Origin: Ruditapes philippinarum
Lineage: Eukaryota
Reading direction: 5' to 3'
Length of the DNA stretch: 64,000 nt
Assembly (NCBI RefSeq): GCF_026571515.1
Contig: NW_026855673.1
Coordinates: 1-64,000, forward strand
Part shown: piece after piece, positions 10,296 to 58,608 of the stretch
Layout of the letters: every line of letters starts with the position of its first letter
Position numbering within the stretch: the stretch's first letter is position 1
Notes under the pieces: generated by a model
Database searches by the model: none
Told to the model about the DNA's origin: nothing
What the model saw: the letters and a program-made list of their open reading frames with translations, nothing else
Made by a program: the position numbers and the translations under genes

Positions 10296-13200
10296 TTATC
10301 TGACTTCAAATCTGAAAAATAAGTCTTTGTCCGGATGAACAACAGCGTGTGCCCAGTCGGTCACAAATCTCAAAGTTCGAGTCTCTGGTACCTTTGATAT
10401 TCTAAATCTATGCAACATAATGGCGGTGGCTATTTTAAGCTCCAGCCAAGCCAGATGCTGACCTATGCACACCCTTGAACCGGCGCCAAATGGTATGTAC
10501 ATTTTGGAGGACGTTCGTTCAGAATTGTCTAAAAATCTGAACGGAATAAATTCCTTGGATTTTGACCATTGTGTATGTGACCGGTGAATACCCCACGTAA
10601 ATGCTTTGATGTCCGTCTGTAATACATAAAAATAGAATTATCATTGTTTGTTAAATATACCATGTATTTTCAAATGAAAAACGATCAAAATACGCAAAAT
10701 TGTACATAGATTTTTTAGTGCGGAAATCACTTATTTAATTACCCACTGTGTCTTTTAGTATAATTATGACAATCTAGTTCTTTAATATAAGAATATCAAC
10801 TGAATTGTTGGTCAGGACAACTTTGAAATTGTAAAAATAAATACCAGCAAAGAGAAATATTTCCCCCTACAAGTGTGGTCGAATAGCTTTACGCATGATT
10901 TTTAAACAAAATAAAAAAATAACAGATTAATATTTTTTAGTTAAAAATAAGCAGCGAAAATTTAATTATGTTACATTTAGAATGGATGGCGGAAAAAAAT
11001 GACGATGATAAAAACGATCTAGTCTGGTTCCCTGCCTACATTTACTACGGAACGTAGTGTAAGGGGAAGGAATTCCAGACTAAATACGATCTTGCAGAGT
11101 GGCCGGACATGGAACTTTTTAAATGACTCAAACAAATAATAAACAGATACAAAGTGAATGTAGTACAAGTCAAATACTGTACATAAATTCGGACAGATAA
11201 ACATACGATGTTATCATGTATGTTTATAAAGGACATGCCTATAATTGGATATATTCTTTTTATACATACGCTCGCTGGAAAGGTAAAATCCCCGACATTG
11301 ACTTCCTCCAGCGTCTGTCTGCTGATGAATGGAGCTATAGGGTAAACACGTAGAACTTCTTTCAATACAGCTTCAAGCTTTGGTAGAGAGAGCGACGGGT
11401 CTTTATACAAAGCGTCTATATTATCGTCTGCTTCAGCTCGGAGTTCTTCCTGATAAAATGATGTCAAACATTTCAGAAATTACAAGGATCTTTTTTTTAA
11501 TTATGATGCTTAATATTCGATATAAATTCAATGGCAATTGTAAAATAACATAAGTTGCTTTGTGTGTTTCGAACAATGTTGCATTCTATGACATTTGGTA
11601 TGAAAATAGTTGTCGTCTGCTGAGAAGCGCGTGATATGACTTTGCCCGCACTATTTTACTCCGTTCTAGCATTTTAAAATGTCATCACGAGTATTGTTTT
11701 GGTCACTCTAGAAATTCCATCAGACCTTAAACTAGAGTTAAGGTAATTCATTCATCAATAGCTCGTGTTAATTCGACAAACCTCGTATCTTTCCGTATCT
11801 GATATTTCTTTAAAAAGCGTTTAGTTGCCTTTATTCTCCTGATCATGTTGACGCTTACTAGTATTTGGGTTTGACAAAAAAGACACGGAAAATTCAGAAT
11901 TATGCCGAACTTTCATTAGCTTCTAATGTTCTTATACGGTATAAATATTGAAAGGACGTTCAATGAGAAAAAATCAAAGTGATGAACTAGAAAGGAAAAA
12001 AATCCAAATACCTGAACATCCGTGTGTGTGGTTAGTAAGTAGACCAAGACGGGTATTGTTGCTGCAGTGGTCTCTGAGCCAGCCATTAAGAATAACTTCA
12101 TATTATCTCGAGCCTATATTAATATATGTATAAATTAATTAATATTAATATAATCTTAATTAATTTATATAATCTAACAAAATGACTATAGTCTTTAAGG
12201 ATAGCAACATTAACATACTTGGACATTAACGAGCTAAGAAACTCTTTTTGATAGATGAAAATATTCCGCAGATGGATTTCCATGTGGTCGTTTCCTAAAA
12301 ATATCTTTGAAAAATCAAGGGAATACATGTAATATTAAACATATACACCTATATGTGTTTATCATGTATATTAAATAACAGAAACATTCTGCGTTACAAT
12401 TCTTTCGAGGACCGACCTTAAGGTAATTATAACAACATAATTTTATTGTTTTCAAATTCTATAAAAATATTTCATTAGATACATGTGCATATAAGATATT
12501 TAAGTTGTTTCTAAAAATACAGGATTTATTTTCATCGAGTGGTATGAAAATAAATATTTCATGAGTGGCGGTAGCCAAGAGTGAAATATGATAATTTTCG
12601 TTGCACAAGATGCAAATTAATCTTGTTTTTAGAGAAAGAATTTGAATTTTGTGTTTATCATATACATTTTTATCTTTTTTTACATTAAAATTTGAAATAC
12701 TTCACCTTAAATTTTGTGTATTGGCTGAATTTGAAAGAAAGTAGATCGGCAAGACACCAGTGAAATTACGGGAAATATATTTCACTGCAGTGAAAAATAT
12801 GGCAAATGTAAATACACATCTTATTTCATCAATATTTCTTAATATATCATTTATAAGGATATAATAAAGCTTTATACTCTTTAATATAAAGTTTATTATT
12901 GAGTTGCTTTTTAAAATAGAAGTAGCTTATCAGCATTTAAATGTGAATGCACTACATGTATTTAATTGTAATTAGAATTTAAATAATATGATAGATTTGA
13001 TATAAAAGTTATTTTTTTCTTTTTTTTTTCATCTTGTGAAATGTTGGCCTACTTTGTAACAGATATCATTTACAACATCAAATTCAGTTGTTAATTGAAT
13101 ATTACTTATATAGCTTTTACGGGCCATCAAATTTAAGTTATCAAAATCGCATGACTTTTGCATTAAAGACAAAGCGGTTTAAAATCGCCAATATGAAGAC

Positions 13201-15700
13201 AAATTTGCAATAACTTTACGTACATATACTTATGTGAACGTTCCAGACCTATTTAACCTCTTATAACTTTTAATTGAGATGAAGTCAGAAATAGAGTATT
13301 CTTTAAAATACACATGTATAACCATACTGTCGCAAAATATATTACCAAATCAAAGCCACACGCTTCGTGTAGTTTAACGACCAGTCTTTTCTCCTCGTGA
13401 CGGTCTTCTATTTTTAGAGCATCTGCTAAGATTTCGGTTGTGAGTTTTTCAAACGTTGCATTTGCTTCTTTAAACTCTTCACTGTCGGCGGTGATCTCAG
13501 CCAATGCATAGCACCTATAATATATCAGTAAAAAAGATATAAAGTGAGATATTTTCTAAAAGGCAGAATGCTTCAATGTCAAAACTAATAAAAAGAAATT
13601 AAACGTAGAAGATAAATCTGAGAATCATAGTTTTAAAAGGCGTTTAAAGTATTGTAATATATGGTACAAGAATGTGCATGTTTGAGGATATTAGCAGAAA
13701 ATATGGAAATTATCTTAATAATTGAACATGAAAACATCGCCACAGAAATTAATTTAACATATAACATATATTATCAGTGAAAATCGGCGGCATTCTACAG
13801 TCAATACATGGCCAGACGAGGAAAATATATATACTTTACGTTATCATTTTGCCATAGACCTTATTTGTTTTAAGAATCTTTTATCTTTAGACTGAACCTG
13901 AAAATATTTTGTAAAGTCACTGATTCTGTGTGATATTTTACTGATATATTGCAGGAATTACCTTCAGATGAAAGTTACAAACTCCCCATATCAAAAAGCA
14001 TACCCCTGTGACTTTAAGCACTCCCTTAACCCTTCTCTATACACTTAAAAATGAAATCAGAAATAACTGAAAAATGTACAACAAACCTGTGTAATATAGT
14101 CATCAGACACTCTAACAACAGTTCTTGTTTTCCCTCTAGCGCGTGCATGTCTAGCTGTAGTAACATGTGACCTACCACGTCCATCGCCATACGCAGTGAC
14201 CAGTCCGTAACATTTACAAGCTGACCTGTGTAGCATGATTGTTTTATATAATTATGTAAAATATGTTTGCACCAAAATTACAAAATGCATACAAAATATA
14301 TATTTGCATGAAGGTGATATGAATTGTTATTTATAGAAACGAAATTAAGTTATTAATAGATACTAAATTTTTACTAAATTCAAGATATACAGGTTTTACG
14401 TCCGCCGTAACAATGGCAAATAATTTTTGCTAAATCAACTTCAATTAACAAAATAATAATTACCTGAGTTTGCTTCGTCCTCTATTTTATCACAAAATGT
14501 CTCTACATCTTTAATAATAAGGTTTCCTTTTTCCTCGAGAACAGATTTTCTAAAGATGGTCGCAATCGCTCTCCGTACTTCTGGACTCCGATTTGTGGAA
14601 CCAAGTATTGTGTCTTTTAATGGAGAGTTTTCTAAATAGTCATGTGCACCCTTTTCTAATTTGTTTATAACGGTCTGTGTTAATTTATGGTCGAATATAT
14701 ATACTTTATTATCAAACCGGAATAATCCGAATTTCTCGTAAAAATCCGTGAGAAACTCTAGTTTTAGTAAGTTATCGTCGTTGAACACTATATCTAGTAA
14801 TTTGTTAACAACAATGCCAGCCTCTGGAATGTGTCCCTTTTTATGCGGCAACTACAAATGGATATACATTGAAATCAAAGCACTGTATGTACTGATTTTA
14901 TTGTGGTCACAAGAAAGCGATATGTTTTTGGCATCTTGACATTACAGTTGTTTTATCTGAGCCATTAAACCTGTTTATTCATTATCAACAATTTTTCTAT
15001 TTAACAAAAAGCATCATAACAAATACTGTCACAGTGCAAGATGCATATAAACCTGAATAAAAATAATTTGTTAAATTTGTTCGATAATTTGTACGACATT
15101 ATTGTGTACAGAAGTATAAGATTTATTCTTTTTACAATAGATCTAAGTATTAATGTCTAAGCCACAACTTGTCGATCGATGTACACTGTTTGAACTAGAT
15201 TTAACCAACCACATCGTCGGATACCCACGGCCGAACCATTAACATTTATTTGATTACTTGACCAACCTCTATGAGTCGTTCTCAAGCCAAAACTTAATCT
15301 GTTGGTAATATCCGCACTACGGTGGCACAATGGTGACATGTGTGTGTTTTTATTTATCTCGTGCGCACGAGATACTACGTCGTGGCCACGAGTTACTAAG
15401 TCGTGGCCACGAGTTACTAAGTCATGGCCACGAGATAGCTAAGTCGTGGCCACGAGATACTGTGTCGTGGCCACGAGATAGCTAAGTCGTGGCCACGAGA
15501 TACAATGTCGTGACCACGAGTTACTAAGTCGTGGCCACGAGAAAGCTAAGTCGTGGCCACGAGATACTATGTCGTGGCCACGAGTTACTAATCAAATCAA
15601 ATTGATAATGTTTTTTATAGTGAAATAAAAGTCTTACCAGATACCGTAGACAGCTGAGAAGAGCAAGTATACACCTCGCTAGAAGCTTGAGTAAAGGCAT
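10296..15700 (-). CDS. Cytochrome P450, atypical and short (453 aa)
   Basis: Seven phase-consistent coding exons: 15638-15700, 14464-14851, 14087-14225, 13346-13514, 12012-12113, 11270-11449, 10296-10616 (1362 nt). I-helix AGSETT, K-helix EVLR, PFRF, heme motif FGAGSRVCIG. Probable non-coding 5' exon ends at 15952 (donor gag|gtatgt). Confidence 0.92.
12520..12800 (+). repeat. Interspersed repeat family with a gagtggc..gccacgagtgaaata hairpin motif
   Basis: Shares motif order with 36441-36880. A related motif lies at about 33350-33715. Confidence 0.5.
15355..15591. repeat. 20-bp tandem repeat containing the palindrome tcgtggccacga (about 11 copies) in the first coding intron of the CYP
   Basis: Units gtcgtggccacgag(tt/at)actaa are directly visible. 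Confidence 0.9.
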
Positions 15701-15951
15701 CTCTAGATAAAAAATAAATATTTAGATTTAATATCATTATAAGTAATAAATCATATGTTTATCAATACGAAAGTGATTCGTACGAAGTTTATATTATTAC
15801 GTTGCGCATAGCATAGATGCATTGAAGACAAACATGTGTATTCATTACACTATACATGTACATGTATATATATTTATGGTTTATTCTCCACGTAATGAAA
15901 TATGATAAAAACGACTTAATTGTAAGAAAAGAAATTTTTTTAGTTACATAC

Positions 15952-16270
15952 CTCTCCCGGAAATCCTGATTTTGCTATAAGATATAATGCATTGGATCTT
16001 GAATATTAAATGTACACGTGTGGCTATTTTTACCGTATATCTATTTTTCAGTATGTTTGTTTCCCATGGTCAAGGTATTAAGATAATTATCTGCATAGGT
16101 CAAAGGGGGTTTACACGGTATAGTATTTCTTCGTGTTAATGGGATGTCATGTCCACGTGTCTTTCGGTGTAGTAATTTTATCAGTGTTGTTGCATTACAA
16201 TCTCCAACGTTATCTAGGATTGCAAACAGTTTAGGAATACCCGCAGTATTCGTCGCTCAAACGTCTCAAA
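15952..16270. promoter_or_regulatory. Putative bidirectional promoter shared by the CYP (-) and the SAM transferase (+)
   Basis: About 320 bp separate the CYP 5'UTR donor (15950-51) and the transferase ATG (16271). CACGTG E-boxes at 16015 and 16154; DR1-like AGGTCAaAGGGGG at 16097. Confidence 0.5.
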
Positions 16271-17476
16271 ATGACTGAAAGTACTGGCGTAAAAGCTGAA
16301 TCTACGAACGCGATCGTAACTTACGATGGGATTTTCAAAGGCATGTACGATGAGAAACTGCAAGAAATGTTCCAGGAAGGTCGCCGGAAGTTTGCTGGCG
16401 GAGATTGGCCTGGTGGAATGAAAATATTTGAAAATATGTTGGAGATTGCAAGTGATAAATCAAAGGATAGAAAAACTCTTGAGGAAATAATGAACGAGTT
16501 GAAACGATACGAGGCGTGCAGAATCGAACCTGGAACCCAGCCAGCCAAAAGCATAGACTGGTCAGCAGTTGCAGACAGACCGTTAGAGCGACTTCATGAA
16601 TCTTTCTTCGGATTACCACAAGGTGTGTTCTTCTTGGATGTCGGGCGTCATGGGAAACCTGGATCAGTACGTCTTGTCGGGAAAAAACTTCTCTCGGACT
16701 ATTTTCTAGCTTTCAAAATTCCTGAACTTTTCTGTAGTTTGGTGAAAGCTGATATGATATTAGGCTTATATGTTGACCAACGTATGAGTGACTCAAATGT
16801 AACAATTTTCTATAATCCAATAGAAAAATCTGAAAAACTTCATGTTATGCAGAAAATAATGTCAAATGGAGGAGCAGACGCCGAATTGATATTTCCGTTT
16901 CCGCTTATGCGCAGTACGACGCGATGTGAATGGGGTTCCCCACCGGAAGGATGGGAAGTTGACGACTCTTATGATATCATGCTAGGATGCGGTGAGGAAC
17001 GGATACGAGCTTATTCAATTCAGTTTCTACGATCTGTTGGACTTGATAAACCAATACTATACGACCCTGCTTGTTCGACAGGGGTATTTTTATCCACGCT
17101 TCAGCAAGCAATTCCCGGAAGTTACACAATCGGCCAAGATCTAAGTCAGCAGATGGCAAATTTCGCAAAAGACCGAGTGGACGAAGCCCATTGTGCAAAC
17201 GCTCTGGATCCAAAGATAAAACTCGGTACCGCCGATGCAGTATACATAAGATTTCTAAATTCGGAGGTGATAAAGACGTGTGAGGCAGAAGAACTTTTGT
17301 CGGCGTTGTTGCCTACAGTTAAAAAAGGCGGATACATAATAACATTTGGTCATACCCCTGTTTTACTATCATCGTCAAATTTTAGACAGCTGTCGGGATT
17401 TCAATTCAAGCAGTCCGTCGGAGTGGCTGTTGACAAGTGTGGTATTTTTCAATACTACGTGATCCAAAAGTCTTAA
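16271..17476 (+). CDS. Intronless class I SAM-dependent transferase, Nat/isonocardicin synthase-like (putative 3-amino-3-carboxypropyl transferase)
   Basis: Uninterrupted 401-aa ORF with caaaATG context and AATAAA near 17623. SAM motif I LYDPACSTG, motif II IGQDLS, then DAVYIRFLN, GGYIITFGHTPVL and IFQYYVIQK. The SAM fold is clear; the Nat similarity is recalled and was not searched. Confidence 0.8.
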   Translation: MTESTGVKAESTNAIVTYDGIFKGMYDEKLQEMFQEGRRKFAGGDWPGGMKIFENMLEIASDKSKDRKTLEEIMNELKRYEACRIEPGTQPAKSIDWSAVADRPLERLHESFFGLPQGVFFLDVGRHGKPGSVRLVGKKLLSDYFLAFKIPELFCSLVKADMILGLYVDQRMSDSNVTIFYNPIEKSEKLHVMQKIMSNGGADAELIFPFPLMRSTTRCEWGSPPEGWEVDDSYDIMLGCGEERIRAYSIQFLRSVGLDKPILYDPACSTGVFLSTLQQAIPGSYTIGQDLSQQMANFAKDRVDEAHCANALDPKIKLGTADAVYIRFLNSEVIKTCEAEELLSALLPTVKKGGYIITFGHTPVLLSSSNFRQLSGFQFKQSVGVAVDKCGIFQYYVIQKS

Positions 17477-17792
17477 AATAATAATGCAATTTATTATTTA
17501 TAGCTGTTCACTTTACAGACATTTCTGTCCAGCAAGAAATTCTGCAAATTGTGCTTTAGATGATGTTTGTCTATTAAATTTGAAGTTGATTGATGAAAGA
17601 AATTTATATGTTGCCTGTACTCAATAAAATAAGTTGAAATATTCACTGTTCTATTGATTTTTGCCATTTTTGTACCGTTTGTCTTCCGTTATTGAATATT
17701 CACATAATCCTGGTACGTATAACTATATTATGTGTCGTACACACATTTTCTTATGCATGAAGACTGTTTGACCATGGGTTAATGGAGAGAAC

Positions 17793-17935
17793 AATGTCAA
17801 ATGGAGAGGCAGACGTCGAATTGATATTTCCGTTTCCGCTTCCGTGCAGTACGACACGATGTGAATGGGGTTCCCCACCGGAAAGATGGGAAGATGGCGA
17901 GTCTTATGATATCATGCTCGGATGTGGCGAGGAAC
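17793..17935 (+). pseudogene. Partial diverged duplicate of the SAM transferase (copy of about 16858-17000)
   Basis: MSNGEADVELIFPFPLPCSTTRCEWGSPPERWEDGESYDIMLGCGEE aligns without gaps to MSNGGADAELIFPFPLMRSTTRCEWGSPPEGWEVDDSYDIMLGCGEE. Confidence 0.85.
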
Positions 17936-18479
17936 CACTTAATATTATTCTGTCAATTTTAGATGATCTGTGCACGGAGAGCTACATATCATAAAGTCCA
18001 ACCATGAATGAAAATATTTCCATTTTTAAAAGCTTTTTTATATTTAGGTACCCTGCTATAGCTTCCGAAATTTGAATCATTTGCCAATTACCTGAACCAC
18101 CTTTTGATATTGTTGCTTTTTGACAATGTGTACAAATATAATGATTATAAGAGTTTGATATGGAAGTCAATGTACTATTTTTGTTCCATTTTTCTTCTTT
18201 TATGACAAATGATTTCACATTCAGCGTTTCTTTCATCAGGTGATTAGCATCTAAAATGCTCTTAAACCGTAATTCAAACTTTATAAAAGTTGTGTCCCCT
18301 TTATAAAAGAAGGGAAACTATCTCTAATTCTGAGGCATAATGAGGCAAATGCTGTAAAACCTAATAAGAGAAATAGATTTGTCCTTTAAATAATTTCCGG
18401 CGTAAGAGATGCAGATCTGTCCGACTTTGCGAGCTGTTGTGACTAAAATTTCAAACTTTGACCACAAACACGTTTTTTT

Positions 18480-19161: not shown

Positions 19162-19394
19162 TAGTAATGCATGCAACGTTATACTAGTGTCTGCTCAGTG
19201 TCAAAGCCCTTTTAAATCATATTGGATCTTAAATTCATAATAGTTAACACCTTTCGAAAATAAGGATATCTTAACCCCCTTTGTATGCAACGAAATTGTT
19301 CTACTTCGGTTTGAGACTTCTGTTGTTATAGTCGTCACAAGATCTTGATTGCAAATGTTGTTCAGTAGGAAAATGATGTATATTGTCTAGAACA

Positions 19395-19620
19395 TTTCAA
19401 CTTCATAAATTTCCGATTTCATCTTCGTGAATTGACGATTTTCACTTTTCAGCACACGGAATTCGCGAATTCAACTTCATAAATTCACGATTTCAACTTC
19501 ATAAATATTCACGATTTCGACTTCACAAATTTAAGTTCGTGAAGTTTAAAACGTGAATTCATGAAGTTGAATTCATGAAGTTGATATTGCGAATTCGAGA
19601 AGATGAGCCCGAAATTTCAA
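19395..19620. repeat. Inverted array of ttcaacttcataaattcacga / tgaattcatgaagttgaa units (MITE-like)
   Basis: Left units are reverse complements of right units. Confidence 0.55.
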
Positions 19621-20292
19621 GCAGTTTAAATGTCACCACCGGTCTTTCATAATTGTCGGCTGCTCCGTTTCTTCATTTTTATACTAATATCCCTTAAACT
19701 TCTTTTCGACTGACCAAAATTCATAATATGAGAAGTCCATTGCACAAAATCAGTGGAGTCGGGTTGAAAGACCATGTCACTGACTTCAATATCCCGGCTC
19801 AGGCTTTTTTTTTACAAAACTTAATATGATTTGGAGACAATGTGAAAAACACGGTATTACCTTGATTAATATGGTACATGTACGACAAAATAGCAGACAC
19901 ATTAATTTTGTCATAGTGAACAACAACAGAATTGGCTTTTAACTTATTTTTAATATTGAGAAAACCGTGGGAAATCATCTAAAATGCTATACAAGTACAT
20001 ATATATGTGATTCCTGATGAAGGTTACTGTAACTAAGTTAAGAAAAAGTATATGAGAGCACGCTAGAAACGGCAATAATTGAATTATGATGTCCCTTCGG
20101 CCTGCTGTCTGCAATTGATTTAATCCATGTAACCACTGCAAACCGAGATCAGCTGGCACATCCGAGACCATTTATAATACAAATCTTTATAGCGCAGTAA
20201 GGGTGTAATGCTCCTAACATTACAAGTTTTAGACTAGTATGTAATGTCTGTAATTAAATAGTATGTATGTAATTGTCCATTTTATTTAGCTC

Positions 20293-23200
20293 TCAGCTTT
20301 TAATGAACAACGTGTGATAACCATTTGAAAACAAGAACTTGATAAGTATTAGCCCTAAAATTACGATAGCAAGTTTCTTAAAAAGTTCTATCCAGCCGTC
20401 GTAGAGTCCGTCTCGTTCATGGTCCCCTGCTTTTCTTGTTTGCATTGGGTACCAGGTCTTTTCCTCAACGCGACTGATGGCATTTCTTGCACCTTCCCAC
20501 TTTCCAGGACCTTCAAGTCTCCACTGCGGTGGTGTTGCGGGGTTGAATACCACCTTTGACCATAGATTGATATCTTTGAAAAATAGTTTCCAAAGATTTG
20601 GCCTACATCCGATGAACTTAGCGACCTCGTCTATATATTGAATGAAATATATTTGCGTCGTATATCTCGGTGAGTCAACGTATTTCTGTTTCACAAATTC
20701 CCGCCATTTCTCTACAGCGTCCAATCTTTTAGCGTTCGTTGGCAGTTGACTGCGACCAGCAAACACGTGTGCGGCCCATCTTGCTTGAGCTTCAAGTACT
20801 GGGGGCAGGGGACCAAACGGCTGGACTAGTCCAATAACTGCTAATGTAGATGGGTTTAGTTCTGTTGGCCAAACCAGCTTATAAAGATACGAAAAGTGAC
20901 CATCCCTTTTTATAATGGACTCATCAAGAAATGGAAAGCTATAAACATATCCTGTTCCTAAAACAACAACATCGATGTCCTTGATCTGTGTGCCATCAAC
21001 AAAAACAGCGCCATCTTCAGTAAAATGTTTGACGTCATTGTGTATACTTATAGCACCAAGAAGAATTCTATTTGGCAAGTCGTCACTTATGGTAACACCG
21101 GCAGACTCAAAATTGAAGTTTGGGGACAGGCCATAGTTTCGGTGCCTGTAGCGATGATTTAACTTGTAGAAATGGTACGGTCTCATGAGTTTCCATGATA
21201 ACGACTGCCGGAAGCGCGTGATAGCGATATGGTCGTATGGAACTCCGAAGTCTGCTGCACGTTGAATTGTGTACGTTCCACGACGTGTACTCATGTAGAC
21301 CTAGAGATACATAAACGTCTGTGTAAACAGAAATAGATGTGTTATAAAACATTTAATCGTGTATTTTTATATACTTTATTATGGCTGAAATAGGCAGCCA
21401 TTTTCTTAAACTACAAATGATCATTCTTTTATAAATTATGTAAATGACATAGCTACTCATTTGAAAAAACGATTTTGCAAAATGAGGAATTTTGGCACAC
21501 AATAAATCATATAGTTAATGCAATTGAAATATGGTATTGTTAATGTTGTATTAGTTGAGCAGTATTATATGAAAATATATCAAATAATCCTCACGTGTTT
21601 AGCATGACGACTTAGCTCACATCCGACATCCGCAGCCGAATTTCCTATCCCTACAATAAGTACATTTAGATTCTCAAAACCTCTGAAATCCTGAAAAGCA
21701 AATTGGATTTGTGCTTAAAAGTTAACAGCAAAAAGTCATATATTTTTGTATTTACGCTTCAGCATAAATATAAATGGTACATAAATGGTACCGATATTCT
21801 AAAATATAAAAATGCACATCATTTATTAGTTCTATGTCAGGAATAAATGATTTAGCAAAAAGGCTTCAGTTTACAGAAAAATTATTTTCTTTAAATATTA
21901 TGCTTCAGAAAATAAATAATACTGACAATAAACAAAGTAAGGCAGAATATAACTTAAGCAATACAAAGTATTTCAATTCTTATTACAATACTCGTATGTA
22001 TGATAAAAGATTTAAATGGTAAAAGACATACACTCGAATAATGCTCGCTACTGTAGCATCAACTCTTCATGTTTGCTTGTTTGTTTAAATGATTGGGTTT
22101 CTTGTAATTGCTATATTGCTTAGAGTGGGTAGTTTGGTAGACTGTTATTTGATGTTGTTGTGTTTTTGTTTATTTGTTTTTGTCCATGTGTTGTTGTAAT
22201 TGCTATACATGTACTGTTTCCAGTGGGGTAGTTTGGTAGACTGTTATTTGATGTTGTTGTGTTGTTGTTTATTTTTTGTTGTCCATTTGTTGCTGAAGTT
22301 GTTGTTCTTGTAGTAGAAGTTGTTGTTGTTGTTGTTGATGACGATGATTATGATGATAATGATGGTGTTGATAATGATGACGATGATGATGTTGATGATG
22401 AAGATGATGATGTTGATGATGACGATGAAGATGATGATGATAATGATGATGTTGGCGGTTGTTTCAGTTTACTTATTTGGACGAAAGAAGTACCTACCTT
22501 ATAGTCATGCGTATGTAGAACCTTGCCTTTAAACTTCTCCAGTCCTGGTAAACTTGGTTTGTTAGGTTCCGTCAGATGACCATTGGCAATCATTACAAAG
22601 TCAAACTTTTCTTTACTTGTTTTGTTACTTTTCAAATCTCTAGTGGTAACAATCCATTGGCCGGTCTCTTCAAAATTATCTGCTTTTTCTACTTTTATGA
22701 CTTCAGTCTGGAATAGTGTTTCAAATTACAAAGAATGCATTACAAAATGAAAGATGTAACATTAATAAATTAATAAAAGATAAATGAATAAATAGTCAGT
22801 TAAACAATCAAAAATGATAATTATCTAATTATCATTAATCATTAATTAATTAATTATTCCAAAATGAATGATATAAAAATAAATAAATCAATCAATTGAT
22901 CAATATCAATTGTCAAAACAGTCGATCTTAAGTTCCAAGCAAAGGATTTTAGTTTTGGTAAATCGTTTAAAGTTGTGCACATGTCACACTGATTAAAAAG
23001 GTCGATTTACAAATATCGTAGCTTAAAACTACCTGTAATTTGATATAGTTCATCAAGTCAAAGTTCTCGGCATAGAGTTCGAGGTATTTCTTGAAGTGTG
23101 TATGATGCATGAAGTTGGGAAAGTCTTTCGGTATTGGGAAGTCACTATAACACGTCATCTCTTTACTCGTGTTGATACTGCACGAGTTATAGAGGCTAGG

Positions 23201-24085
23201 TTCCTGGTCATTGGACGCATAGTCTCTGTAGTGCCACAATCCACCTAGAATATGAGTATGAACTTATGACTTGTTTGTACTACAAGAAAAACTGTTCCTC
23301 GTTTTGAAAACATATACAATTGTATATAAATTAGAGCGACCCACCATGGTCGGGAGTTCTACGTCAACTTGCTTGTAACCGTAATTAATGAACTCGTTGA
23401 GGCCTCTGTGTACATTTTAATGTCAGTTGCAAATTGTTACAATATTGTACTTTGAATAATTAAAGGTAAATTTCGCTATCTTAAAGTTGATAGAAATTAG
23501 TCAAAATACGATGAACTTCAAACGCTTATGAATGGGAAAGTGTATTACAGATTAAAGAAATAAAATATTGGTCATCATTTCCCTGCATAATGATTAACTT
23601 TATTCAACATAATATGGCTTTATACAATAAAACCCTTTGCTAAAAAGAAATAAAAATAAACTTAAAAACCGTTGAAAATAATGAGAGAGTACCTTACAGG
23701 AAACTGCATCTTCTAAAAAAGTAAAAATGTAGAAAAATAGCATGCTGGGAGCTAAAAATTTAATTGACTAATGCCGTTAGTAAAGAGCTACGCCAGTCTT
23801 CAAGTCCGTTGTTTTTTTGTTGTTGTTGTTTTTTTCGGGGGGGGGGGGTTGTTGTTTTTCACATATATTTCTTTTGTAAGCTATGCTAAGTCGAGCTTCA
23901 AAGTTTCAAACTGGTCCAGAAAAAAAACTTATACAGAAGGGTAAATTAAAGAGACTTATATTAAAGAACAAACCAATATCAAAGTCCTTCTCAAAGCAGA
24001 CAGGTTTGATCCCCTCTTCTAGGCACTGCTTGACACCCGCCAGGCCAGCTACCCCCGCCCCTATCACACAGCACGTCTTTGACAT
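20293..24085 (-). CDS. FMO: Flavin-containing monooxygenase (FMO5-like), 545 aa
   Basis: Five phase-consistent exons: 23974-24085, 23033-23244, 22498-22707, 21595-21690, 20293-21300 (1638 nt). FAD motif GAGVAG, GGLW, INTSKEM, FMO fingerprint [16 protein letters not shown] motif GIGNSA, LGTGY, and a C-terminal hydrophobic anchor. Confidence 0.95.
22318..22452. repeat. (GTT)n/(GAT)n microsatellite in an FMO intron
   Basis: Directly visible. Confidence 0.9.
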
Positions 24086-25184
24086 CAGGAATCTCAACTA
24101 AATAATAAAACTGAATAAACTTTTAATTTAATTTAATTTAGTAAGGTACCTTTTCTCAATAAATTTGTTTGAATGCACGGGGATGTCGTGCGATTGTGTG
24201 TAACATCAATGTTTTATCTTCTTAATTTTAGTTATGAAAGACACTATACAACATCGTTCCAATATATATATAAGTGAAAGACGTGTCATTATAACATGTA
24301 TTTATTCTTTTCCTATATTTTTCATTATTTTATTCCATTCAGTCAAATTGTTAAAGAACTATTTTTTCCTGCATGATAATCATTGGATTTGTGATTTGCA
24401 ATTCAATTATTAGATTACGAAAATACGTATATTTCTGCTTATTAAAGCATTAACTTAATATTTCATACATATCTATAAAACGCACATCATTGCATACAAA
24501 AAAAATCATAAAATTAAAAGAAATGTTTTAAACAGAATTCTGTACCTACCGAAGTAGTGAAATCTTCCCCGCGATCGAAATAAGTACGAAAGAGTAATTT
24601 CAGTTTATGGTTTTATTTAGAAATGTCATTCCATTCCTTTCTTCTCAAACCAGCTGTTAATTCCCAAAGTTTTATAACTCTGTTATGAAATGGCCTCTAA
24701 CTTTTGTGTAAAAATGCGTAAAATGACCAAACAAGTGTCTCGTTAAGTACGAAAGTTTCTTCTTAATCAGGAGTAACTACTACAATTATCTCCCCGTACA
24801 CCTTACTTCACAGTCAAATTTGTTGGGAAATAATGATGTTAAATGTTGGGAAAAGAAATCTGGTTTAACGAGAGGCTACTTAATTCAAACATAACTATTT
24901 AGTGCAAATTAATTCAAAACAATATATTAAGTGAACAAATTAAGGTATACACATATTTTAGCAAATGGCACATGAAATACACAATATACTAGTTAATTAT
25001 TTGAACCACCTTTGAGTCTTGACAGCTTTAAATAGAATTATTTAAATATAATTATTTACTAGAACTTATCAGTTCTGGCATCAAAGCCGTCATTCCGTTC
25101 CTTTTAATAAGGAAATTAATTCAGCGTATTTGCTCGTGCATTAACAGTGCACAAAGAAAGACATAGGATGATTTTTGTTTTGTT

Positions 25185-29737: not shown

Positions 29738-32700
29738 TTAAACTGGTTTTATTTTGAGATAAAGTCCGTTTTTACTTCTCAATATCAGAATGCATTCTGG
29801 TTCAGCTTTTCTTTCAGGGTCAAGGTCAAGTTTGAAATGACGTAACAGTTCGCAGATAACGACCTTGACCTGTGTCAGTGCAAAGTGTTGCCCTATACAA
29901 TTTCTGAAATAAAAATTAAAATATGAAAGAATAAATTCCTAATAAACAAATGTTTTGATGCATATCATATCTCTGCCACATGTTTAATTAGATCTACAAA
30001 TGTAGGTTATAGCCAAGGTCACACAAACACTGTCAATGTCATATGATAACTTTCCAGCTTAACTGGTGAGGGACCAACTCAAAAAACACTATGTTTGATA
30101 GTTCATGTAAAAGCAAGAACTGGAGTAGAACCACTGACTTGTATAGCCTTCTCATAATTATGTAAAAATTGATGACCCTATAGCGTTATTAAAACAATAG
30201 GTGTGACCATGACAACAGGCCAAGTGATTTGAAGTCAGCCACTTTTATCACATGACCACAGAGGCCTAATTTGTATAACTGCTATATATACTCTCGTAGA
30301 TATCAAGTTAATAATATTTGTTTAATATTGAATTAAATGGAACCCTTAATAATTTGGATTACCCTGAAGAAAACTTTATTTTCAAATGCAATATCACAGA
30401 TATTGGTATTATTGTCAAAAGGCTGAAAAAGGTCCATTTTTGTCACTTTTTGCATATAAAAAGATGACTCAAACACAAAATTTTCATAAATAATGATGCT
30501 ATTTAAATATTGAGCAGGTGGCAAGAAAACAGCTAGAATATATTAAACACTAACCTTGGTCCTATAGAAAATGGGAGATGATACACTGAGGATATTTTAC
30601 TACCATTTGTAAATCTATCTGGGTCAAACTCCTGAAAGGTCAACAAAAGGTCAAGGTCAAAAAAATATGTAACTTCTAAAATTATGCTTATCTGAATACC
30701 AGTATTCAATAAAAAAGTGACCATATGACTCCTGTTCACAAAGAAAAAGATCAGGGTCAAATGTTCTTGCATTTATTTTAATGCTATATGAAACTTACAT
30801 ATTAGGCTAAAAATAATATGATCCATATATAAAATGTAAAACGTTGCTGAATTTGCATTAAACGCAATGAAACAAACACATTTTGGAATAAAATTTAAGA
30901 ATAAAAATGCAAAATACAAAAATCACTGGGTCAAAATAAGGATCAAATTTAGGATCAAGTATTTGGGTCAATTTGAAATTAGCGTATCATGTGAATAAAT
31001 CATGAAATCTTTATAAACTTCCACCATCTTATATTCATACGATTGGATGCCAAAACATACCACTGTTTTGTCAGTCTGTACAAACAAACAGAATGACAGA
31101 CAAGGGCAAATCTGTATAAGCTAACCCTCTAGTTGTCCGGTAAATTTAGTGTACTTTTTTGTAGAGTTTGAGGTTACACCAACCCTGTGTAAAAATTATA
31201 ATGCCACTTTACAGCATTACTGATCTATAGTCCCAAGCATGCAGTAGAATTACCTTCCTGTTAGCTAGATGAAACAGTTTTTTCACATGATAGAATAGAA
31301 TGATAGTTTCACAAAAAAAACAAAGGTAGATTTAAAAGTTGGAAGTAGTATGGTAATAATTTAAGGCAAAATTGTGCTTACATTAGGATTATCCCAGACT
31401 TCAGGATCTCTTTGCACTGCAAACAGTGAGACAGTAATTCTCATATCTGAAATAATAATGGGAGAATAAAGTTTTAATGTTAAAAATCATAGTGGTAGAA
31501 AAGTGCTTATCTAAGAAACTTTCAGGAGAATAAAAGTTATACATGTGCATTGTTAAATGAGAAAGTTTGGCTATAAGGTTTACCTATAAAAAATAGGTGT
31601 AAAAATTACAGGAAAATATTTAGTAAAAACAATGGGATATTTTTGGTTTTCTCAACTATACAAAATCTTATACATATTTTATATCATTGATATATTTTAT
31701 CATTTAATTGACATTGCTGCAATTAAAAATTGTGCTGTCATATTAAGCAACTGCAAGAAGCATTTTTGTTTTGATCTGGAAGACAAAAAGTGCTATAAAA
31801 TATTCATTATTTTTTCATCAAGTTTCTATTTATCTTTTTTTCCTCAGAATTGGGGCAAAAATGTTGTTTGGGATAATAAAACTTAAAATGCCACATACCC
31901 TGTGGTATGCTTAAAACTAGATTTTACATCAGCAACAACAGTCAAGCATTAGAAATCATGCTAAAAATAGATTACCTTTAGGTATGACACGGCCATCAGG
32001 CAGGTCGAGATCTCTCTCCAGACAACGTGATATGTTTGGTACAGCAGGAAACAATCTCATGCTTTCCTGTATACATGCATACATGTACTCTAACTTCGTA
32101 AGATCATCCCTGAACAAAATATAGATTATTTCTGTCACTATTACATAAGTATAGTAAGATATCACAACAAGCATTTTTTTTCCATATGAAGGACAGCAGT
32201 TTTTTACTTAATAAAAAATGTTTACACATTCATATCCATTCAACCTTTAATAGAGGATACTGAATGAGTGTAGGTTCAATACTGAATTTACTGGACAAGT
32301 TCAATAAATTTAGTAATGAAGCTTCATGAATATAATAGTCTGTTTATCACATACTTGTATCCAAAATAACTTTAACGGTAAAAAATAATTGCAGAGGGGA
32401 CCCTCAGTAATCCTAAACACATATTATGCTAATTTATCCTGTTAATCATGTTGTATTACAAACATTACAATGTATATTCAATAGAAATGGTGGCTTAGTG
32501 AATAAGGTGGTCACCACTTAACCATGAGAACCTGTGTTCAAGCCCGGATGGGGTTGCGACCATAATGTTCACATTTTAACCATGAGATCAAGAGTTCAAG
32601 CCCTGATGTGGTCGCAACCATAATGTTCACCTCTTAACCATGAGATGGAGAGTTCAAGCCCTGATGGGGTCGGGACAATAATTCCTCAAATTAATGATAC

Positions 32701-34288
32701 CAGTACTGGTTTTTGTTCCAGATAATTCACAGAACACTGGATTAAATAAGCTTAAGACTTTCATCAGAATCAAGCTAAAAAAAATATTATTTAACTTAAC
32801 TAAGAAGTAAATAACTAGAGCATACCATGACAGTATTTTAGTTTTGCCGACAACTTTGAGAATTTCTTCTCTACACCTGTCCTGGCAGGCTTGATGTTTA
32901 GCCAGGTTATACAGACACCAGGATATTGTGCTGGCTGTTGAGTCGTGACCTTCAAACATAAACGTGTCAACCTCATCACGAATCTCCTGATCGGTCATGC
33001 CGTCACCATCATTGTCCTTAATAAATAAATAGTCAAAGATTTATAAGATAATAAATAATGGTAATTTTAATGACTTGTAGTAAATTAAATAATTATTTAA
33101 TCAATTGTAATATAAAGATGAAATGAGTTATGATATAATGAATAATGATATAATTAGTAATGATATAACTAAACAATGATATACATGTAAATAAATATAA
33201 TGATGAAAAAAGAAATGATGTATTTAATAATGATTTAAAGAATAAATAATGATGTTATGAATAATAATCAATTAAATAATTATCAATTGAATAATGATGT
33301 TATGAATAATGGTCAAAGAAATAATAATGATGTAATGAACAATGATCAATTATATATTCTAACACGACAGAAAATGTGTGTTATTATGCAATAATGTCAC
33401 AGTTGACGTTCTATATTTAGATATGCGACGTAATCATCATACATGTGACGTAACCACTAAAAGAATCCGACGCGCTGAAAATAAGTACGGGAACAAATCA
33501 GGCACAATTTCGCTTAATATCAGGTACGGCAGCATTTATTTGTTGATGTCATGTTAGAATCGAAATAATATATCCAAATTGGTGATTTTATCGCTTGATA
33601 ACATCAGTTTTTCATTCGGATGCGCATCATTATATCACTCGGGCTATGCCCTCGTGATATAATTTGTCACATTCAAACTCCAAACAGTGATGTTATTGAG
33701 CGGGATATATTATATTTCTTAAATGATGTTATAAATAACAGTCAATAGAATGAATTGATATAATGAATAATCATCAAAAATATGAACAATGATGTAATGA
33801 TGCTATGCATACTTTCCATTTTATTTGTGACCAATCATTCTTTAACTAGAAAAAACAATCATTTTATCTGTTGTGGAAGATACAGCCTTATATTCAGAAT
33901 AAGGTTAAATTCCTTGAAACATTGAAAACTTTCATTATATGCTACCAAATTAATAAGACTTACCTTTGCAGTAAGTAGGATATCTAAGAAATCAACATTT
34001 CTTGCTCCCTTTGCCTCCGACTTCAACAACTGTTTTCTCTTTTTTATTATTTTCTCTGAATGCTCATGAATAGCATGGCATGCTTGTTTAAATTTCTTTC
34101 TGAAATATATTATATGTTATACATATTACATTTTGAAAGTAATACACCTTAACCCCTGCTGGTGTGTTGGTCTGTCTGAATGTCTGAGACAAGTATTGAT
34201 CATGTATGTATGAAATGAATAGCCCTTTAACATTAATTTTATAATATCAAAAAAGCTTCTATCAAAGTTGTAGTAAATGCTTTTACTG

Positions 34289-34326
<38 letters not shown>

Positions 34327-37300
34327 TTTTTGATTTGCAAAATGGTAACGGTGTATATGACTTTGAGTGTATTTTAAATAATAAATTATTTTTTATTAAC
34401 AAAAGTCACTGTTTCATGTCATTTCCTTACGTAAGTGCAGTAACTGGTTAAGTCCTTCTAAATTTAATAGGATTTAACCAATTTAATAGGATTTAACCAG
34501 TTATTGCGCTTAGGTGGCAATTTGTCATATTTTACTTGTTAAACTATGCCTAAATAATCATTACTTTACTTTTTTGATATCATATTTTGTATATTTGATG
34601 TAGAATTATTGACAAAATGAAGGCAATTTTTTACCCATTTTCTGTAAAGTTATAATAGATGAAGTCATAGTGGTGTAGAGGCTTGATGATTCTTTTGACA
34701 ATAAGTTCCGATACATCGTAAACACCCTGAATATATGGATGCCTTGTTCTGAAATAAAATATGTTTCAGTTGAGTTTTACGTCACACCTTGAACACAGTA
34801 CATGTATAAGTCATATGGCAACTTTCCAGCTTTACTAATGGAGAAAGACCTTAGGTGCCCTTCCATACATTATTTCAGGCACCAATGGGCATGTGAGTAG
34901 AATAACCGATGTTCCGTAAAACAAATTATGTAAAAAATTTAATCAATTAAATACAAAATTCATTCTGCTAGACAATGATGTCTATTTCCACATTTCAAAC
35001 TTATTTTTGGTTATAACTTTTTTAATTATTTTTCACAGTGCAATTTTTTTTCTTGTACAAAATTAATCATATTCACTAAAATAAAACAATGCAATATAAA
35101 AATCTTTTATTCTGTAAGAATCAAAGTAAATTTGATGTTCTTTCACTATTTACATTTGTACATTTATATCTGAAATATTCATGATATATATTGTCTTAAT
35201 TATTCTTTGTCTTCATTTTATTTTCCACAGGATGTATAATTATGTAGTAAAAAAAATAGTTTAGACAAAAAAAATTGAAGCAAAAATAAAATAAAACATA
35301 CACAAACAAAATCATTTGATCTGGGGGTTGACTGCAAAAATGCAGTAACTTAATATACGAAATAAAGAAGGACTAATATTACAGTCTTGTGGTCAACCCT
35401 CTAAAATTTCACTCTAATCAACTAAAAAAACTTTACTCAAATCATCAAATGATGTATAATTATTTAAGTATTTACTTTTCATTTTGGCAGTTGCTATGGT
35501 AACCAAAAAGACATTGCATCATACTGTCTAATGTAAGAAGACTTATGTGATGAAACACCTCTTCTGAACCAGCTGATTTTCGCCATTTATCCTGAAAGAT
35601 CATTGAACATCTACATGTGTATATATGTAATATTTAAAGTGAATTGTACCATAATGGAAAGTTTGTAATACCATGAATAATTATGTTGATAGTATTTAAA
35701 GCTACATGCCTCCAGATGAGTCTCAATAAAATCAAACTTGAGAAAAATGTACTAGGAATAGTAAAAGGATTCAATATTCAAGTAATATTTTACATTTTTT
35801 GTGCGATTAATGACTGATTTTTCAGTATTTACAACTATATTTCTACTGCGTTACTAACGCAGTTACTAACGCAGTAAGGGCTATTTATGTATATTTTGAC
35901 CACTTTTGGTAATTAACGTAGGTTGTAAGCACCAATGATAATGTGTATGTTGCTGCCTTTTGGTTACTCCACAATATTACACATTCAAATAAATTTTCAA
36001 AAATTTCATGAAAATAAGTAAAGAAATATTTCATAAGAATACTTAAATGATACATTTCTATTGCTCTTATCAATACATGTATCTGAATTTCAGAAATGTA
36101 TACTAACTGACAGTCAAAGAGATTTCAATATATTATTGTTCAGGCAATGTTTATTTCTATCAATTAGACAGTAACAGAAACAAGCATCAGTAAATCATTA
36201 AATTGGGTGAAAACCATTCTGGCCGATTAATAAGGCTAATTGATGACTCAGAGCACCCCTTAGCAAATGGCTAGATTATGATAATTAACACTTAAACTTA
36301 CAATTAGAACTTTTGTACTCCTGCTGAATACAATGACATAATTTTTTAGGATGTCAGCATGAAAAGCAGGTGTCATCAATCTTCTGTTTCTATCCCATTT
36401 TTTACCTTTACTCAACAACAGCCCATCTCCTGTAATATATAGAGGATATTTGTTTAGTTCAGTGTAAGATCGGAATATATTTCACCGAGTGAGCACCAAA
36501 AGGTATATTTCACGAGTGGCGCAGCCACGAGTGAAATATGAACTTTTGGTGTTCACAAGGTGAAATATATTTTGATCTTACACTAAACTAAACAAATTTT
36601 CTTTTTATTATATGCAAAGAAACGTTTTAAAAAGACATTAAACCTAATACTGAATGAAAAGCGCGCCAAATAATAATACAACGTGACGTCATTTACGACG
36701 TCACGTCATTAAGTTGGTACCCAGTTCTGTGCACGCTGGTATTTCAGTGAAACAACGTAAGGGGCTTAAATTCAAAACAGTGAAATTATCAAAGTGGTAA
36801 TTTCACTGTTTCAAACAGTGAAATTACCAGTTTTTATATCACTGATATATTTCTATAAACCACCGAAAAGCATGTAATAAATCATTGTTTTCTACATTGT
36901 AAACTTAAATTTAGATAATACCACTTCATACAGTGGCATAAAAGTGACATTTGCAATTTGTTTTTTTTTTGTTGTTTTTTTACACTTATGTTTTTTTTTA
37001 TTACATATGTATTTTTTGTGTTTTCATACATATTTTTTTTTTTTTTTTTTTTTTCGTACATGTTTTATTTTAGTTTTGTATACATTTGTTCTTTTAGATT
37101 TGCATACATATTTTTTTTCAGTTAGCAAAACTAAAAAAAAATGTGTATGAAAAACTAAAATAAAATATGTATGCAAAACTAAAATAAAATATGTACAAAA
37201 AACAAAACAAAAATACGTATGAAAAGCAAAAATAAAATAAGTATGAGAAACAAAAAAAAAGAATGAAAAAATTTATTGAAAACATACAGATCTCAGGTAA

Positions 37301-57318: not shown

Positions 57319-58071
<753 letters not shown>

Positions 58072-58608
58072 TGATAAAATAATAAGTTTTGTCTTTTATA
58101 AGTCACAAATGTTTCCTTAACCCCTAACTTGGTCAGATTTTATGTATTTTTCTTTATTGTATAATGTCAGCTTTATAGATTCTGTTCTTGATCTCTTTGG
58201 AGAAAGCTTTTTTTTAGAAAACAATATGGTGTTTATGGTACCAAGCTTTGTTTTATTTCTAACTTCATTCTCATAGCCTTTTCCCTTTCAATGATAGAAA
58301 AGTAAAATAGTTCCTTTATCAAAATTCTGCAACTAAGATTTACAGTCGAAACCAGTTTTGTATTACAAGAGTGGTTATTTTCAATAATGTGAGCTGTTGA
58401 CATTAAAAAAATCTGTTTTCCATGGAACTACTCAAGGCAACCAATCCACATGTTGTTATAAGTATTCCAAAAGGGTATGGATCGTGCTCTTAAATTACTG
58501 AGAAAAAAAGACAGGTCTGGGTTTTATTATTTCTAAAAATAGCAATATTAATTTACTAATCACTATTCATCTTTTAATTATTTAAATGTAGTTTACAGTC
58601 CCTATGAT

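What the first reader, a model, noticed from the sequence alone, without database searches (positions are those of the whole stretch)
16271..17476. Intronless, bacterial-type Nat/isonocardicin-synthase-like gene in an animal genome (possible horizontal transfer)
Seen: a single-exon 1.2-kb ORF among genes that are all multi-exon. Its SAM motif I is DPACSTG rather than the usual DxGCGxG, followed by TIGQDLS, RFLNSEV, FGHTPVL and FQYYV. I recall this motif set from bacterial Nat homologues, not from any standard metazoan methyltransferase. The first roughly 85 residues are a helical extension ahead of the Nat-like part. The gene has a eukaryotic ATG context, a polyA signal and host repeats on both sides, which argues against contamination. 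Inference: it was horizontally acquired and may transfer ACP rather than methyl.
Basis: partly seen in the sequence, partly recalled or inferred. Interest (0 to 1): 0.82.

Follow-up and report, generated by a model that had tools for sequence, protein, structure and literature searches.

The report
Mollusc bursatellin-pathway aminocarboxypropyl transferase gene

Summary
It is a clear homologue of isonocardicin synthase Nat (PDB 8zhu: sequence E 1.2e-43; model TM 0.90, rmsd 2.2 A).

It is host DNA, not contamination:
- It lies between interspersed host repeats.
- It sits head-to-head with a multi-exon P450 and next to a multi-exon FMO.
- Its GC3 matches its neighbours.
- RNA covers it without a splice.
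- Its polymorphism shows purifying selection (12 synonymous, 8 non-synonymous).

In trees, mollusc and rotifer sequences form one clade inside a wide bacterial radiation.

This is already published. Venugopalan & Schmidt (JACS 2025, PMC11869996) describe the mollusc bur-ox cluster: NRPS FmtATR, ACT, a soluble P450 and FMOs. They show that the Mytilus ACT transfers aminocarboxypropyl from SAM to the tyrosinol phenol, and they propose ancient HGT. This genome also has an FmtATR NRPS, on another contig.

Minor additions:
- a second, unclustered bivalve paralogue; the scan probably noted this genome's copy as s1-810611
- rotifer relatives that share the N-terminal helical hairpin
- evidence for a shared P450/ACT promoter region
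- a silent 56-aa gene fragment downstream

Verdict: real, correctly read, not novel.

The parts
16271..17476 (+). ACT coding sequence: 401 aa, single exon, Nat-like SAM:aminocarboxypropyl transferase (group A, clustered copy)
   Evidence: ORF. PDB 8zhu E 1.2e-43. AF2 model pLDDT 93.9 and Foldseek 8zhu TM 0.90. RNA contigs are colinear with the genome over 16142-17530, and raw RNA reads cover it.
16142..16270 (+). Probable ACT 5' UTR / shared promoter region with the divergent P450
   Evidence: Run X1 contig 16142-16400 is colinear with the genome. The P450's first non-coding exon reaches 16167 on the other strand. The strand of the contigs is not known, so the TSS is inferred.
17477..17628 (+). 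ACT 3' UTR with ATTAAA (17573-17578) and AATAAA (17623-17628)
   Evidence: Sequence. RNA contig reaches 17530. Read depth is zero from 17600.
17779..17946 (+). Decayed partial duplicate of ACT (56 aa, 71% identical to residues 192-247), not transcribed
   Evidence: tblastn of own genome. No RNA depth at 17600-17999. No Pfam hit.
10296..16167 (-). P450 gene, head-to-head with ACT. Exons approx 16167-15952 (non-coding), 15702-15638 (ATG at 15700), 14851-14444, 14277-14029, 13555-13256, 12113-11919, 11479-11048, 10637-10299
   Evidence: Pfam p450 on exons. Open segments. Two GT..AG minus-strand splice joints in RNA contig X1 record 1. Start-codon exon. Internal exon borders are approximate.
20296..24097 (-). 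Flavin-containing monooxygenase gene, 4 exons (24097-23909, 23263-22970, 22725-22351, 21300-20296)
   Evidence: Pfam FMO-like E 2.3e-84 on the last exon and 6.5e-11 on the first. Six-frame search.
15317..15592 (.). Interspersed host repeat between P450 exons, upstream of ACT
   Evidence: More than 3000 candidate copies, with 90-95% identical copies on many contigs. RNA depth is about 30-fold above its surroundings, with loose ends.
19392..19650 (.). Interspersed or tandem host repeat downstream of ACT
   Evidence: More than 2000 candidate copies on many contigs.

Best explanation
The ORF is this mollusc's copy of the bur-ox pathway aminocarboxypropyltransferase (ACT). It is a class-I-methyltransferase-fold enzyme of the Nat (isonocardicin synthase) family. 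It binds SAM and transfers the 3-amino-3-carboxypropyl group, not the methyl group, to the phenolic oxygen of N-formyl-tyrosinol made by the FmtATR NRPS. That gives the homoserine ether which oxidases (the adjacent P450 and FMO) are proposed to convert to bursatellin/oxazinin-type nitriles. The gene descends from a bacterial ACT acquired long ago, before bivalves and gastropods split. It is now an ordinary host gene: expressed, under purifying selection, host-like in composition, and paired head-to-head with the pathway P450. Shown here: homology, fold, genomic integration, transcription without introns, the cluster context, and the phylogenetic position. Taken from the literature: the chemistry, shown for the Mytilus enzyme. 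Inferred: that this protein has the same substrate, and the direction and age of the transfer.
For: Sequence match to Nat: 8zhu_A E 1.2e-43, query 100-400 against chain 32-325. AF2 model pLDDT 93.9, pTM 0.92. Foldseek gives 8zhu/8zhv E 5e-32, TM 0.90, rmsd 2.2 A; the next hits are generic methyltransferases at E 1e-9. All family-invariant residues are present. Closest relatives are mollusc proteins, several named 'isonocardicin synthase-like' by NCBI. Cluster context: divergent P450 at 10.3-16.2 kb and FMO at 20.3-24.1 kb. An Fmt-A-T-R NRPS is present as one 1642-aa ORF on contig C2246. The paper describes this same gene set and proves ACP transfer by McalACT (PMC11869996). RNA: raw reads from two runs cover the ORF and colinear contigs span 16142-17530. 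Of the 20 ORF variants that read laying listed, 12 are synonymous and 8 non-synonymous against 265 and 938 sites (pN/pS about 0.19), and all 7 in residues 260-401 are synonymous. Tree supports: mollusc A 100/97, A+B 99/95, animals 94/84, all other branches bacterial.
Against: The NRPS is on a different contig, so full clustering is not shown in this assembly. Only one FMO is adjacent, where the paper reports two. RNA depth is low in the runs laid and absent in a third (X23). No biochemical data exist for this protein. The tree is unrooted, and the two nearest non-animal sequences (P0073, P0083) are of unknown organism.
Confidence: 0.85

Rival explanations
1. The gene is an ancient eukaryotic or metazoan gene inherited vertically and lost in most animal lineages. 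No horizontal transfer is involved.
For: Molluscs and rotifers form one clade and share the N-terminal hairpin with its preceding motif. That fits presence in a common spiralian ancestor. The tree is unrooted.
Against: Named eukaryotic hits are confined to molluscs and a bdelloid rotifer, while bacterial homologues span many phyla. The animal clade is a single short-stemmed branch among deep bacterial branches. The gene and its paralogue lack introns. The other pathway genes (NRPS, P450) are also reported as bacteria-like (PMC11869996).
Confidence: 0.1
2. It is an ordinary SAM-dependent methyltransferase that only resembles Nat, and it transfers methyl.
For: Pfam sees only generic Methyltransf_25/11 just above threshold. 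No assay was done on this protein.
Against: The specific full-length match to Nat in sequence and fold is far above that to any methyltransferase. The family's own motif I (DPACSTG) replaces the glycine-rich methyltransferase motif and is invariant. A mollusc member was shown to transfer ACP.
Confidence: 0.04
3. It is bacterial or symbiont contamination, or a misassembly, in the animal assembly.
For: Bacterial-type protein, no introns.
Against: It shares a 165-kb contig with intron-bearing FMO, P450 and SH3-kinase genes. Host repeats flank it on both sides. An RNA contig splices the P450 exons to within about 100 bp of the gene. GC 0.43 and GC3 0.38 match neighbouring exons. Runs from 11 studies of the same organism hold it. 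The closest bacterial protein is only about 37% identical.
Confidence: 0.01
4. It is a retrocopy of an intron-containing parent gene.
For: Single exon, with polyA signals downstream.
Against: A six-frame search of the whole 1.4-Gb genome finds only this gene, an equally uninterrupted 39%-identical paralogue, and the short fragment. There is no multi-exon parent. The gene sits in the conserved pathway cluster. No polyA tract or target-site duplication was noticed in the flanks read.
Confidence: 0.02

Closest known systems
McalACT / bur-ox aminocarboxypropyltransferase of molluscs (Venugopalan & Schmidt, J Am Chem Soc 2025, PMC11869996)
   Same: Mollusc-encoded Nat homologue of about 400 aa, next to a P450 and an FMO, with an FmtATR NRPS in the genome and bacterial nearest relatives outside invertebrates. 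NCBI names clade members 'isonocardicin synthase-like'.
   Different: It is another species' copy. Here the NRPS is on another contig and only one FMO is adjacent. Activity was not assayed, and no direct alignment with McalACT was possible.
Isonocardicin synthase Nat of the nocardicin pathway (PDB 8zhu, 8zhv)
   Same: Same fold over about 300 residues (TM 0.90, 33-34% identity). Same signature motifs. Also an ACP transfer from SAM to a phenolic oxygen of a tyrosine-derived substrate.
   Different: Nat is 326 aa and lacks the first two helices of the N-terminal bundle. Its substrate is a beta-lactam tripeptide. Some motif positions differ: DAACSTG against DPACSTG, and FQCYV against FQYYV.
Uncharacterised bacterial Nat-like proteins (Cardinium, Rickettsiella, Legionellaceae, Chlamydiae, Streptomyces, Bacilli, candidate phyla)
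   Same: 31-38% identical over residues ~60-400, with all invariant residues shared.
   Different: Mostly about 335 aa without the helical hairpin. A few 440-aa forms do carry it (P0111, on a dense 55% GC bacterial-type contig; P0073 and P0083 of unknown organism).
Other ACP transferases (Tsr3, TYW2, TapT/DTWD, nicotianamine synthase/CntL, BtaA, MccD)
   Same: Same chemistry: nucleophilic attack on C-gamma of SAM with MTA as the leaving group (as listed in PMC11869996).
   Different: No detectable sequence relation was found here, and none appeared in the PDB sequence or fold searches ahead of generic methyltransferases.

Membership tests
Nat / isonocardicin synthase family of SAM:3-amino-3-carboxypropyl transferases | Significant sequence homology to Nat across the whole catalytic region | tested here: met
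   phmmer against PDB: 8zhu_A E 1.2e-43, query 100-400 against chain 32-325
Nat / isonocardicin synthase family of SAM:3-amino-3-carboxypropyl transferases | Same three-dimensional fold (beta-rich N-domain plus Rossmann-like SAM domain) | tested here: met
   AF2 model pLDDT 93.9. Foldseek 8zhu/8zhv E 5e-32, TM(target) 0.90, rmsd 2.2 A. Next best E 1e-9
Nat / isonocardicin synthase family of SAM:3-amino-3-carboxypropyl transferases | Family signature residues (D-P/A-A-C-S-T-G, R-x-L-N, G-H-T-P-V-L, F-Q-x-Y) | tested here: met
   All present. D265, A267-G271, R327, F328, N330, P363 and L365 are invariant in 100 homologues. The same blocks are visible in the Nat alignment
Nat / isonocardicin synthase family of SAM:3-amino-3-carboxypropyl transferases | ACP transfer with release of MTA | not testable with these tools
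   Shown for Nat and for the Mytilus enzyme in the literature, not for this protein
Mollusc bur-ox pathway ACT (McalACT orthologue) | Belongs to the mollusc ACT clade that spans bivalves and gastropods | tested here: met
   Group A clade 100/97, holding Haliotis, scallops, an ark shell, unionids and the window protein
Mollusc bur-ox pathway ACT (McalACT orthologue) | Direct orthology to the assayed enzyme McalACT | tested here: inconclusive
   The McalACT sequence is not held (no supplements). The assignment rests on synteny and naming. A second paralogue group B exists
Mollusc bur-ox pathway ACT (McalACT orthologue) | Genomic clustering with the pathway P450 and FMO | tested here: met
   P450 head-to-head, with its coding start exon 569 bp from the ACT ATG. 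FMO 2.8 kb downstream
Mollusc bur-ox pathway ACT (McalACT orthologue) | FmtATR NRPS in the same genome and cluster | tested here: inconclusive
   An Fmt-A-T-R NRPS is present (L085:648-5576, Pfam), but on contig C2246. Linkage is unknown in this fragmented assembly
Mollusc bur-ox pathway ACT (McalACT orthologue) | Pathway P450 lacks an N-terminal membrane anchor | tested here: inconclusive
   The main first coding exon has no anchor. A spliced 65-nt exon adds 21 leucine-rich, basic residues with the ATG. Its nature was not tested
Processed retrocopy | An intron-bearing parent gene elsewhere in the genome | tested here: not met
   Whole-genome six-frame search finds only uninterrupted copies and a fragment

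The most novel reading that the evidence does not exclude
All animal Nat-like ACTs share one origin: the clustered mollusc group A, an unclustered bivalve group B, and the bdelloid-rotifer genes. They would descend from a single acquisition of a hairpin-bearing bacterial ACT, older than the phylum Mollusca or passed between spiralian animals. Group B, which the 2025 paper's main text does not mention, would then make a different and still unknown aminocarboxypropylated metabolite.
Probability: 0.25. Interest if true: 0.45.

Novelty: already known. Interest (0 to 1): 0.25.

Why it matters
The gene belongs to one of the very few animal-encoded non-ribosomal peptide pathways. It is also a rare example of a bacterial-type enzyme with unusual SAM chemistry working in an animal. 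Both points were established by Venugopalan & Schmidt in 2025. This window therefore mainly shows that the scan can recover such cases from raw sequence. It adds small details: promoter sharing between the P450 and ACT, a second paralogue lineage, rotifer kinship, and a bacterial origin for the N-terminal hairpin.

Tried and rejected
I could not inspect gene structure and neighbours of the orthologues in other molluscs, or the contigs of P0073 and P0083.
- The metagenome scan did not return the contig of P0083. It returned only that of P0111, which looks bacterial.
- No paper on the Nat crystal structures (8zhu, 8zhv) is in the library, so catalytic residues could not be mapped from the literature.
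- PDB searches with two P450 exons did not test the paper's claim that this P450 is bacteria-like. The haem-binding exon hits mainly eukaryotic-type CYP97/17/4/3A and some CYP102, and the first coding exon hits nothing.
- The P450 exons were searched one by one.
- NCBIfam gave only sub-threshold methyltransferase hits.
- The large representative-protein search was not used. It carries no taxonomy and could not settle absence from other phyla.
- One translate call on locus L002 was in the wrong frame and uninformative.
- Contamination, retrocopy and plain-methyltransferase readings were considered and rejected (see rivals).

Full report
**Observation.** The window holds one ATG-to-stop ORF at 16271..17476 on the + strand, 401 aa. 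It is the longest ORF in the 64-kb window. The surrounding DNA is about 33% GC. In alignments of 22 and 100 homologues these blocks are the invariant or nearly invariant columns of the family. Examples are D265, A267-G271, R327, F328, N330, P363 and L365.

**What the protein is.**
- Pfam sees only generic Methyltransf_25/11, just above threshold. NCBIfam finds nothing above its cut-offs.
- Against PDB sequences the protein matches isonocardicin synthase Nat (8zhu_A) at E 1.2e-43, residues 100-400 against chain 32-325. Nothing else is significant.
- An AlphaFold2 model built on 100 homologues has mean pLDDT 93.9 and pTM 0.92. It shows three N-terminal helices (28-42, 46-62, 64-83), a beta-rich domain (106-207) and a Rossmann-like SAM domain (232-400).
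- Foldseek puts the Nat structures 8zhu and 8zhv first: E 5e-32, TM 0.90 on the target, rmsd 2.2 A. Ordinary methyltransferases follow only at E 1e-9.

**It is already published.** A full-text search for 'isonocardicin synthase' returned Venugopalan & Schmidt, J Am Chem Soc 2025 (PMC11869996). Their main points:
- Molluscs carry a bur-ox gene cluster: an NRPS (FmtATR), an aminocarboxypropyltransferase (ACT) homologous to isonocardicin synthase, a P450 predicted to be soluble and bacteria-like, and two animal-type FMOs.
- Recombinant ACT from Mytilus californianus uses SAM to put an aminocarboxypropyl group on the phenolic oxygen of N-acyl tyrosinols.
- The genes occur across bivalves and many gastropods.
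- The authors propose an ancient horizontal transfer that predates the split of molluscan classes.

**The window fits that cluster.**
- A P450 lies on the minus strand at about 10.3-16.2 kb. Its coding pieces are near 14851-14444, 14277-14029, 13555-13256, 12113-11919, 11479-11048 and 10637-10299.
- An FMO lies on the minus strand with four exons between 24097 and 20296.
- The genome has an NRPS with exactly the Fmt-A-T-R architecture: Formyl_trans_N, AMP-binding, PP-binding and NAD_binding_4. It is one 1642-aa ORF, but on another contig, C2246.
- Linkage of the NRPS to this locus cannot be judged, because the assembly has 15,874 contigs.
- Only one FMO is adjacent here.

**Host gene, not contaminant.**
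- The window is the first 64 kb of a 165-kb contig in a 1.4-Gb genome.
- Interspersed repeats lie on both sides of the gene, at about 15317-15592 and 19392-19650. Each has thousands of candidate copies on other contigs.
- GC (0.43) and GC3 (0.38) match the neighbouring FMO, P450 and kinase exons.
- Runs from 11 studies of the same organism hold the stretch.

**Transcription.**
- Raw RNA-seq reads from two runs cover about 15800-17599 at low depth. They give no depth over 17600-17999.
- Contigs of an older, probably RNA, run are colinear with the genome over 16142-16400, 16433-17211 and 17231-17530. The ORF therefore has no intron.
- The same run has a contig joining 14463-14851, 15638-15702 and 15952-16167, with CT..AC ends on the + strand. 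These are GT..AG introns on the minus strand, so the P450 has two extra 5' exons.
- The first of those exons ends about 100 bp from the ACT start codon. The two genes are head-to-head and probably share a promoter region. This is inferred, because the contigs carry no strand.
- ATTAAA at 17573-17578 and AATAAA at 17623-17628 follow the stop codon.

**Selection.** Read laying lists only the best-supported differences, so the variant list is incomplete. Of the 20 variants it listed inside the ORF, 12 are synonymous and 8 non-synonymous. The ORF has 265 synonymous and 938 non-synonymous sites, so pN/pS is about 0.19. All seven variants in residues 260-401 are synonymous. The gene is functional and constrained.

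**Origin.**
- The word-based protein search found 167 relatives. Those at 50-82% identity are mollusc proteins: unionids, an ark shell, scallops and an abalone. Several are named 'isonocardicin synthase-like' by NCBI.
- A second set at about 40% identity is also bivalve (pearl oyster, scallop, unionid).
- A bdelloid rotifer protein follows at 37%.
- Proteins of about 335 aa come next. The named ones are bacterial.
- A scan of one genome per bacterial species found the family in Actinomycetota, Pseudomonadota, Bacillota, Bacteroidota, Chlamydiae, Bdellovibrionota and candidate phyla. Many hosts are intracellular symbionts or pathogens such as Cardinium, Rickettsiella, Legionellaceae and Francisellaceae. 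None exceeds 38% identity to the window protein.

**Tree.** I built a careful IQ-TREE on 67 sequences, dropping columns filled in fewer than 60% of rows. That removes the N-terminal extension.

| Clade | UFboot / SH-aLRT |
|---|---|
| Mollusc group A (with the window protein) | 100/97 |
| Mollusc group B | 100/99 |
| Molluscs A+B | 99/95 |
| Rotifers | 100/100 |
| All animals together | 94/84 |
| Animals plus P0073 and P0083 (440 aa, unknown organism) | 98/97 |

Every other branch is bacterial (a 103-row quick tree agrees). The tree is unrooted. For any root outside the animal clade, the animal genes are one derived branch within bacterial diversity. The whole-genome search finds no intron-bearing parent. 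It finds only this gene, an uninterrupted 39%-identical paralogue on C14205, and a 56-aa fragment. Together these results support ancient bacterial-to-animal transfer and argue against a retrocopy. Vertical inheritance with massive loss is not formally excluded.

**The N-terminal extension.** Typical bacterial homologues begin to align at about residue 60-76 of the window protein. The extra part is two helices forming a TPR-like hairpin, preceded by a short conserved motif. Mollusc groups A and B and the rotifers all share it. A similar hairpin occurs in three 440-445-aa relatives. One of them, P0111, sits on a 13.6-kb contig of 55% GC packed with ORFs of bacterial type. The hairpin may therefore have come with the donor gene rather than being an animal invention.

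**Mechanism.** The most likely working is as published for the Mytilus enzyme:
1. FmtATR makes N-formyl-tyrosinol.
2. This enzyme binds SAM so that C-gamma, not the methyl carbon, faces the phenolate. It releases MTA and forms the O-homoserine ether.
3. The P450 and FMO are proposed to hydroxylate the product and oxidise the amino acid to the nitrile.

Shown here are homology, fold, conservation, expression and context. Chemistry and substrate are carried over from the literature and are not tested for this protein.

**Limits.**
- No supplements of the paper are held, so McalACT itself could not be aligned.
- The large representative search was not used.

**Verdict.** The gene, its activity, its cluster and its probable horizontal origin are all in the 2025 paper, so novelty is low. 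The scan also noted a Nat-like gene on another piece of this genome (s1-810611, 1263 letters). That is the length of the C14205 paralogue's ORF.

Noticed in passing
window 15638-15702 (-): A 65-nt exon spliced onto the first large P450 coding exon supplies the ATG (15700) and 21 leucine-rich, basic residues with no acidic ones. It looks like a targeting or anchor peptide. The published bur-ox P450 is described as lacking a membrane anchor.
   Followed up: partly
window 15952-16270: The P450's first non-coding exon ends about 100 bp from the ACT start codon on the opposite strand. This suggests a shared bidirectional promoter for two pathway genes.
   Followed up: partly
window 17779-17946 (+): A 56-aa remnant of ACT (71% identical to residues 192-247) lies 300 bp past the stop codon. 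No RNA covers it. It is probably the relic of a tandem duplication.
   Followed up: partly
G000:C14205:148493-149629 (-), locus L002: A second, 39%-identical, uninterrupted Nat-like ORF (420 aa from the first Met). It belongs to a bivalve-wide paralogue group B (pearl oyster, scallop, unionid). No P450, FMO or NRPS hit was seen on its contig. Function unknown. Probably the scan's finding s1-810611.
   Followed up: partly
G000:C2246, locus L085:648-5576 (-): FmtATR-type NRPS (formyltransferase, adenylation, carrier and reductase domains) as one 1642-aa ORF without introns, on a different contig from ACT, P450 and FMO.
   Followed up: partly
proteins P0018 and P0026: In another mollusc, two group-A ACT copies (about 67% and 56% identical to the window protein) lie on the same contigs in several assemblies. 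The clustered ACT is therefore duplicated in that species.
   Followed up: no
G000 contigs C12023, C13302, C8208 and others: At least 18 full-length P450 genes in this genome are single uninterrupted ORFs, some in tandem. Intronlessness alone is thus a weak sign of foreign origin here.
   Followed up: no
G000:C12228:137-227 kb: A tandem array of about ten FMO genes or pseudogenes, several with in-frame stops.
   Followed up: no
window 29741-40775 (-): A second, CYP4-like P450 with a typical N-terminal membrane anchor and at least eight exons. It is an ordinary animal P450 and probably not part of the pathway.
   Followed up: no
window 57343-58074 (+): A 243-aa open exon encoding an SH3 domain followed by the start of a protein kinase domain. 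An ordinary animal gene on the same contig.
   Followed up: no
L086:12021-13112 (+): On the bacterial-type metagenome contig that carries the hairpin-bearing ACT homologue P0111, a neighbouring ORF has a weak match to the anthrax lethal factor N/C-terminal domain family (Pfam ATLF, E 8e-12). A trypsin-like protease and a beta-propeller protein are nearby.
   Followed up: no
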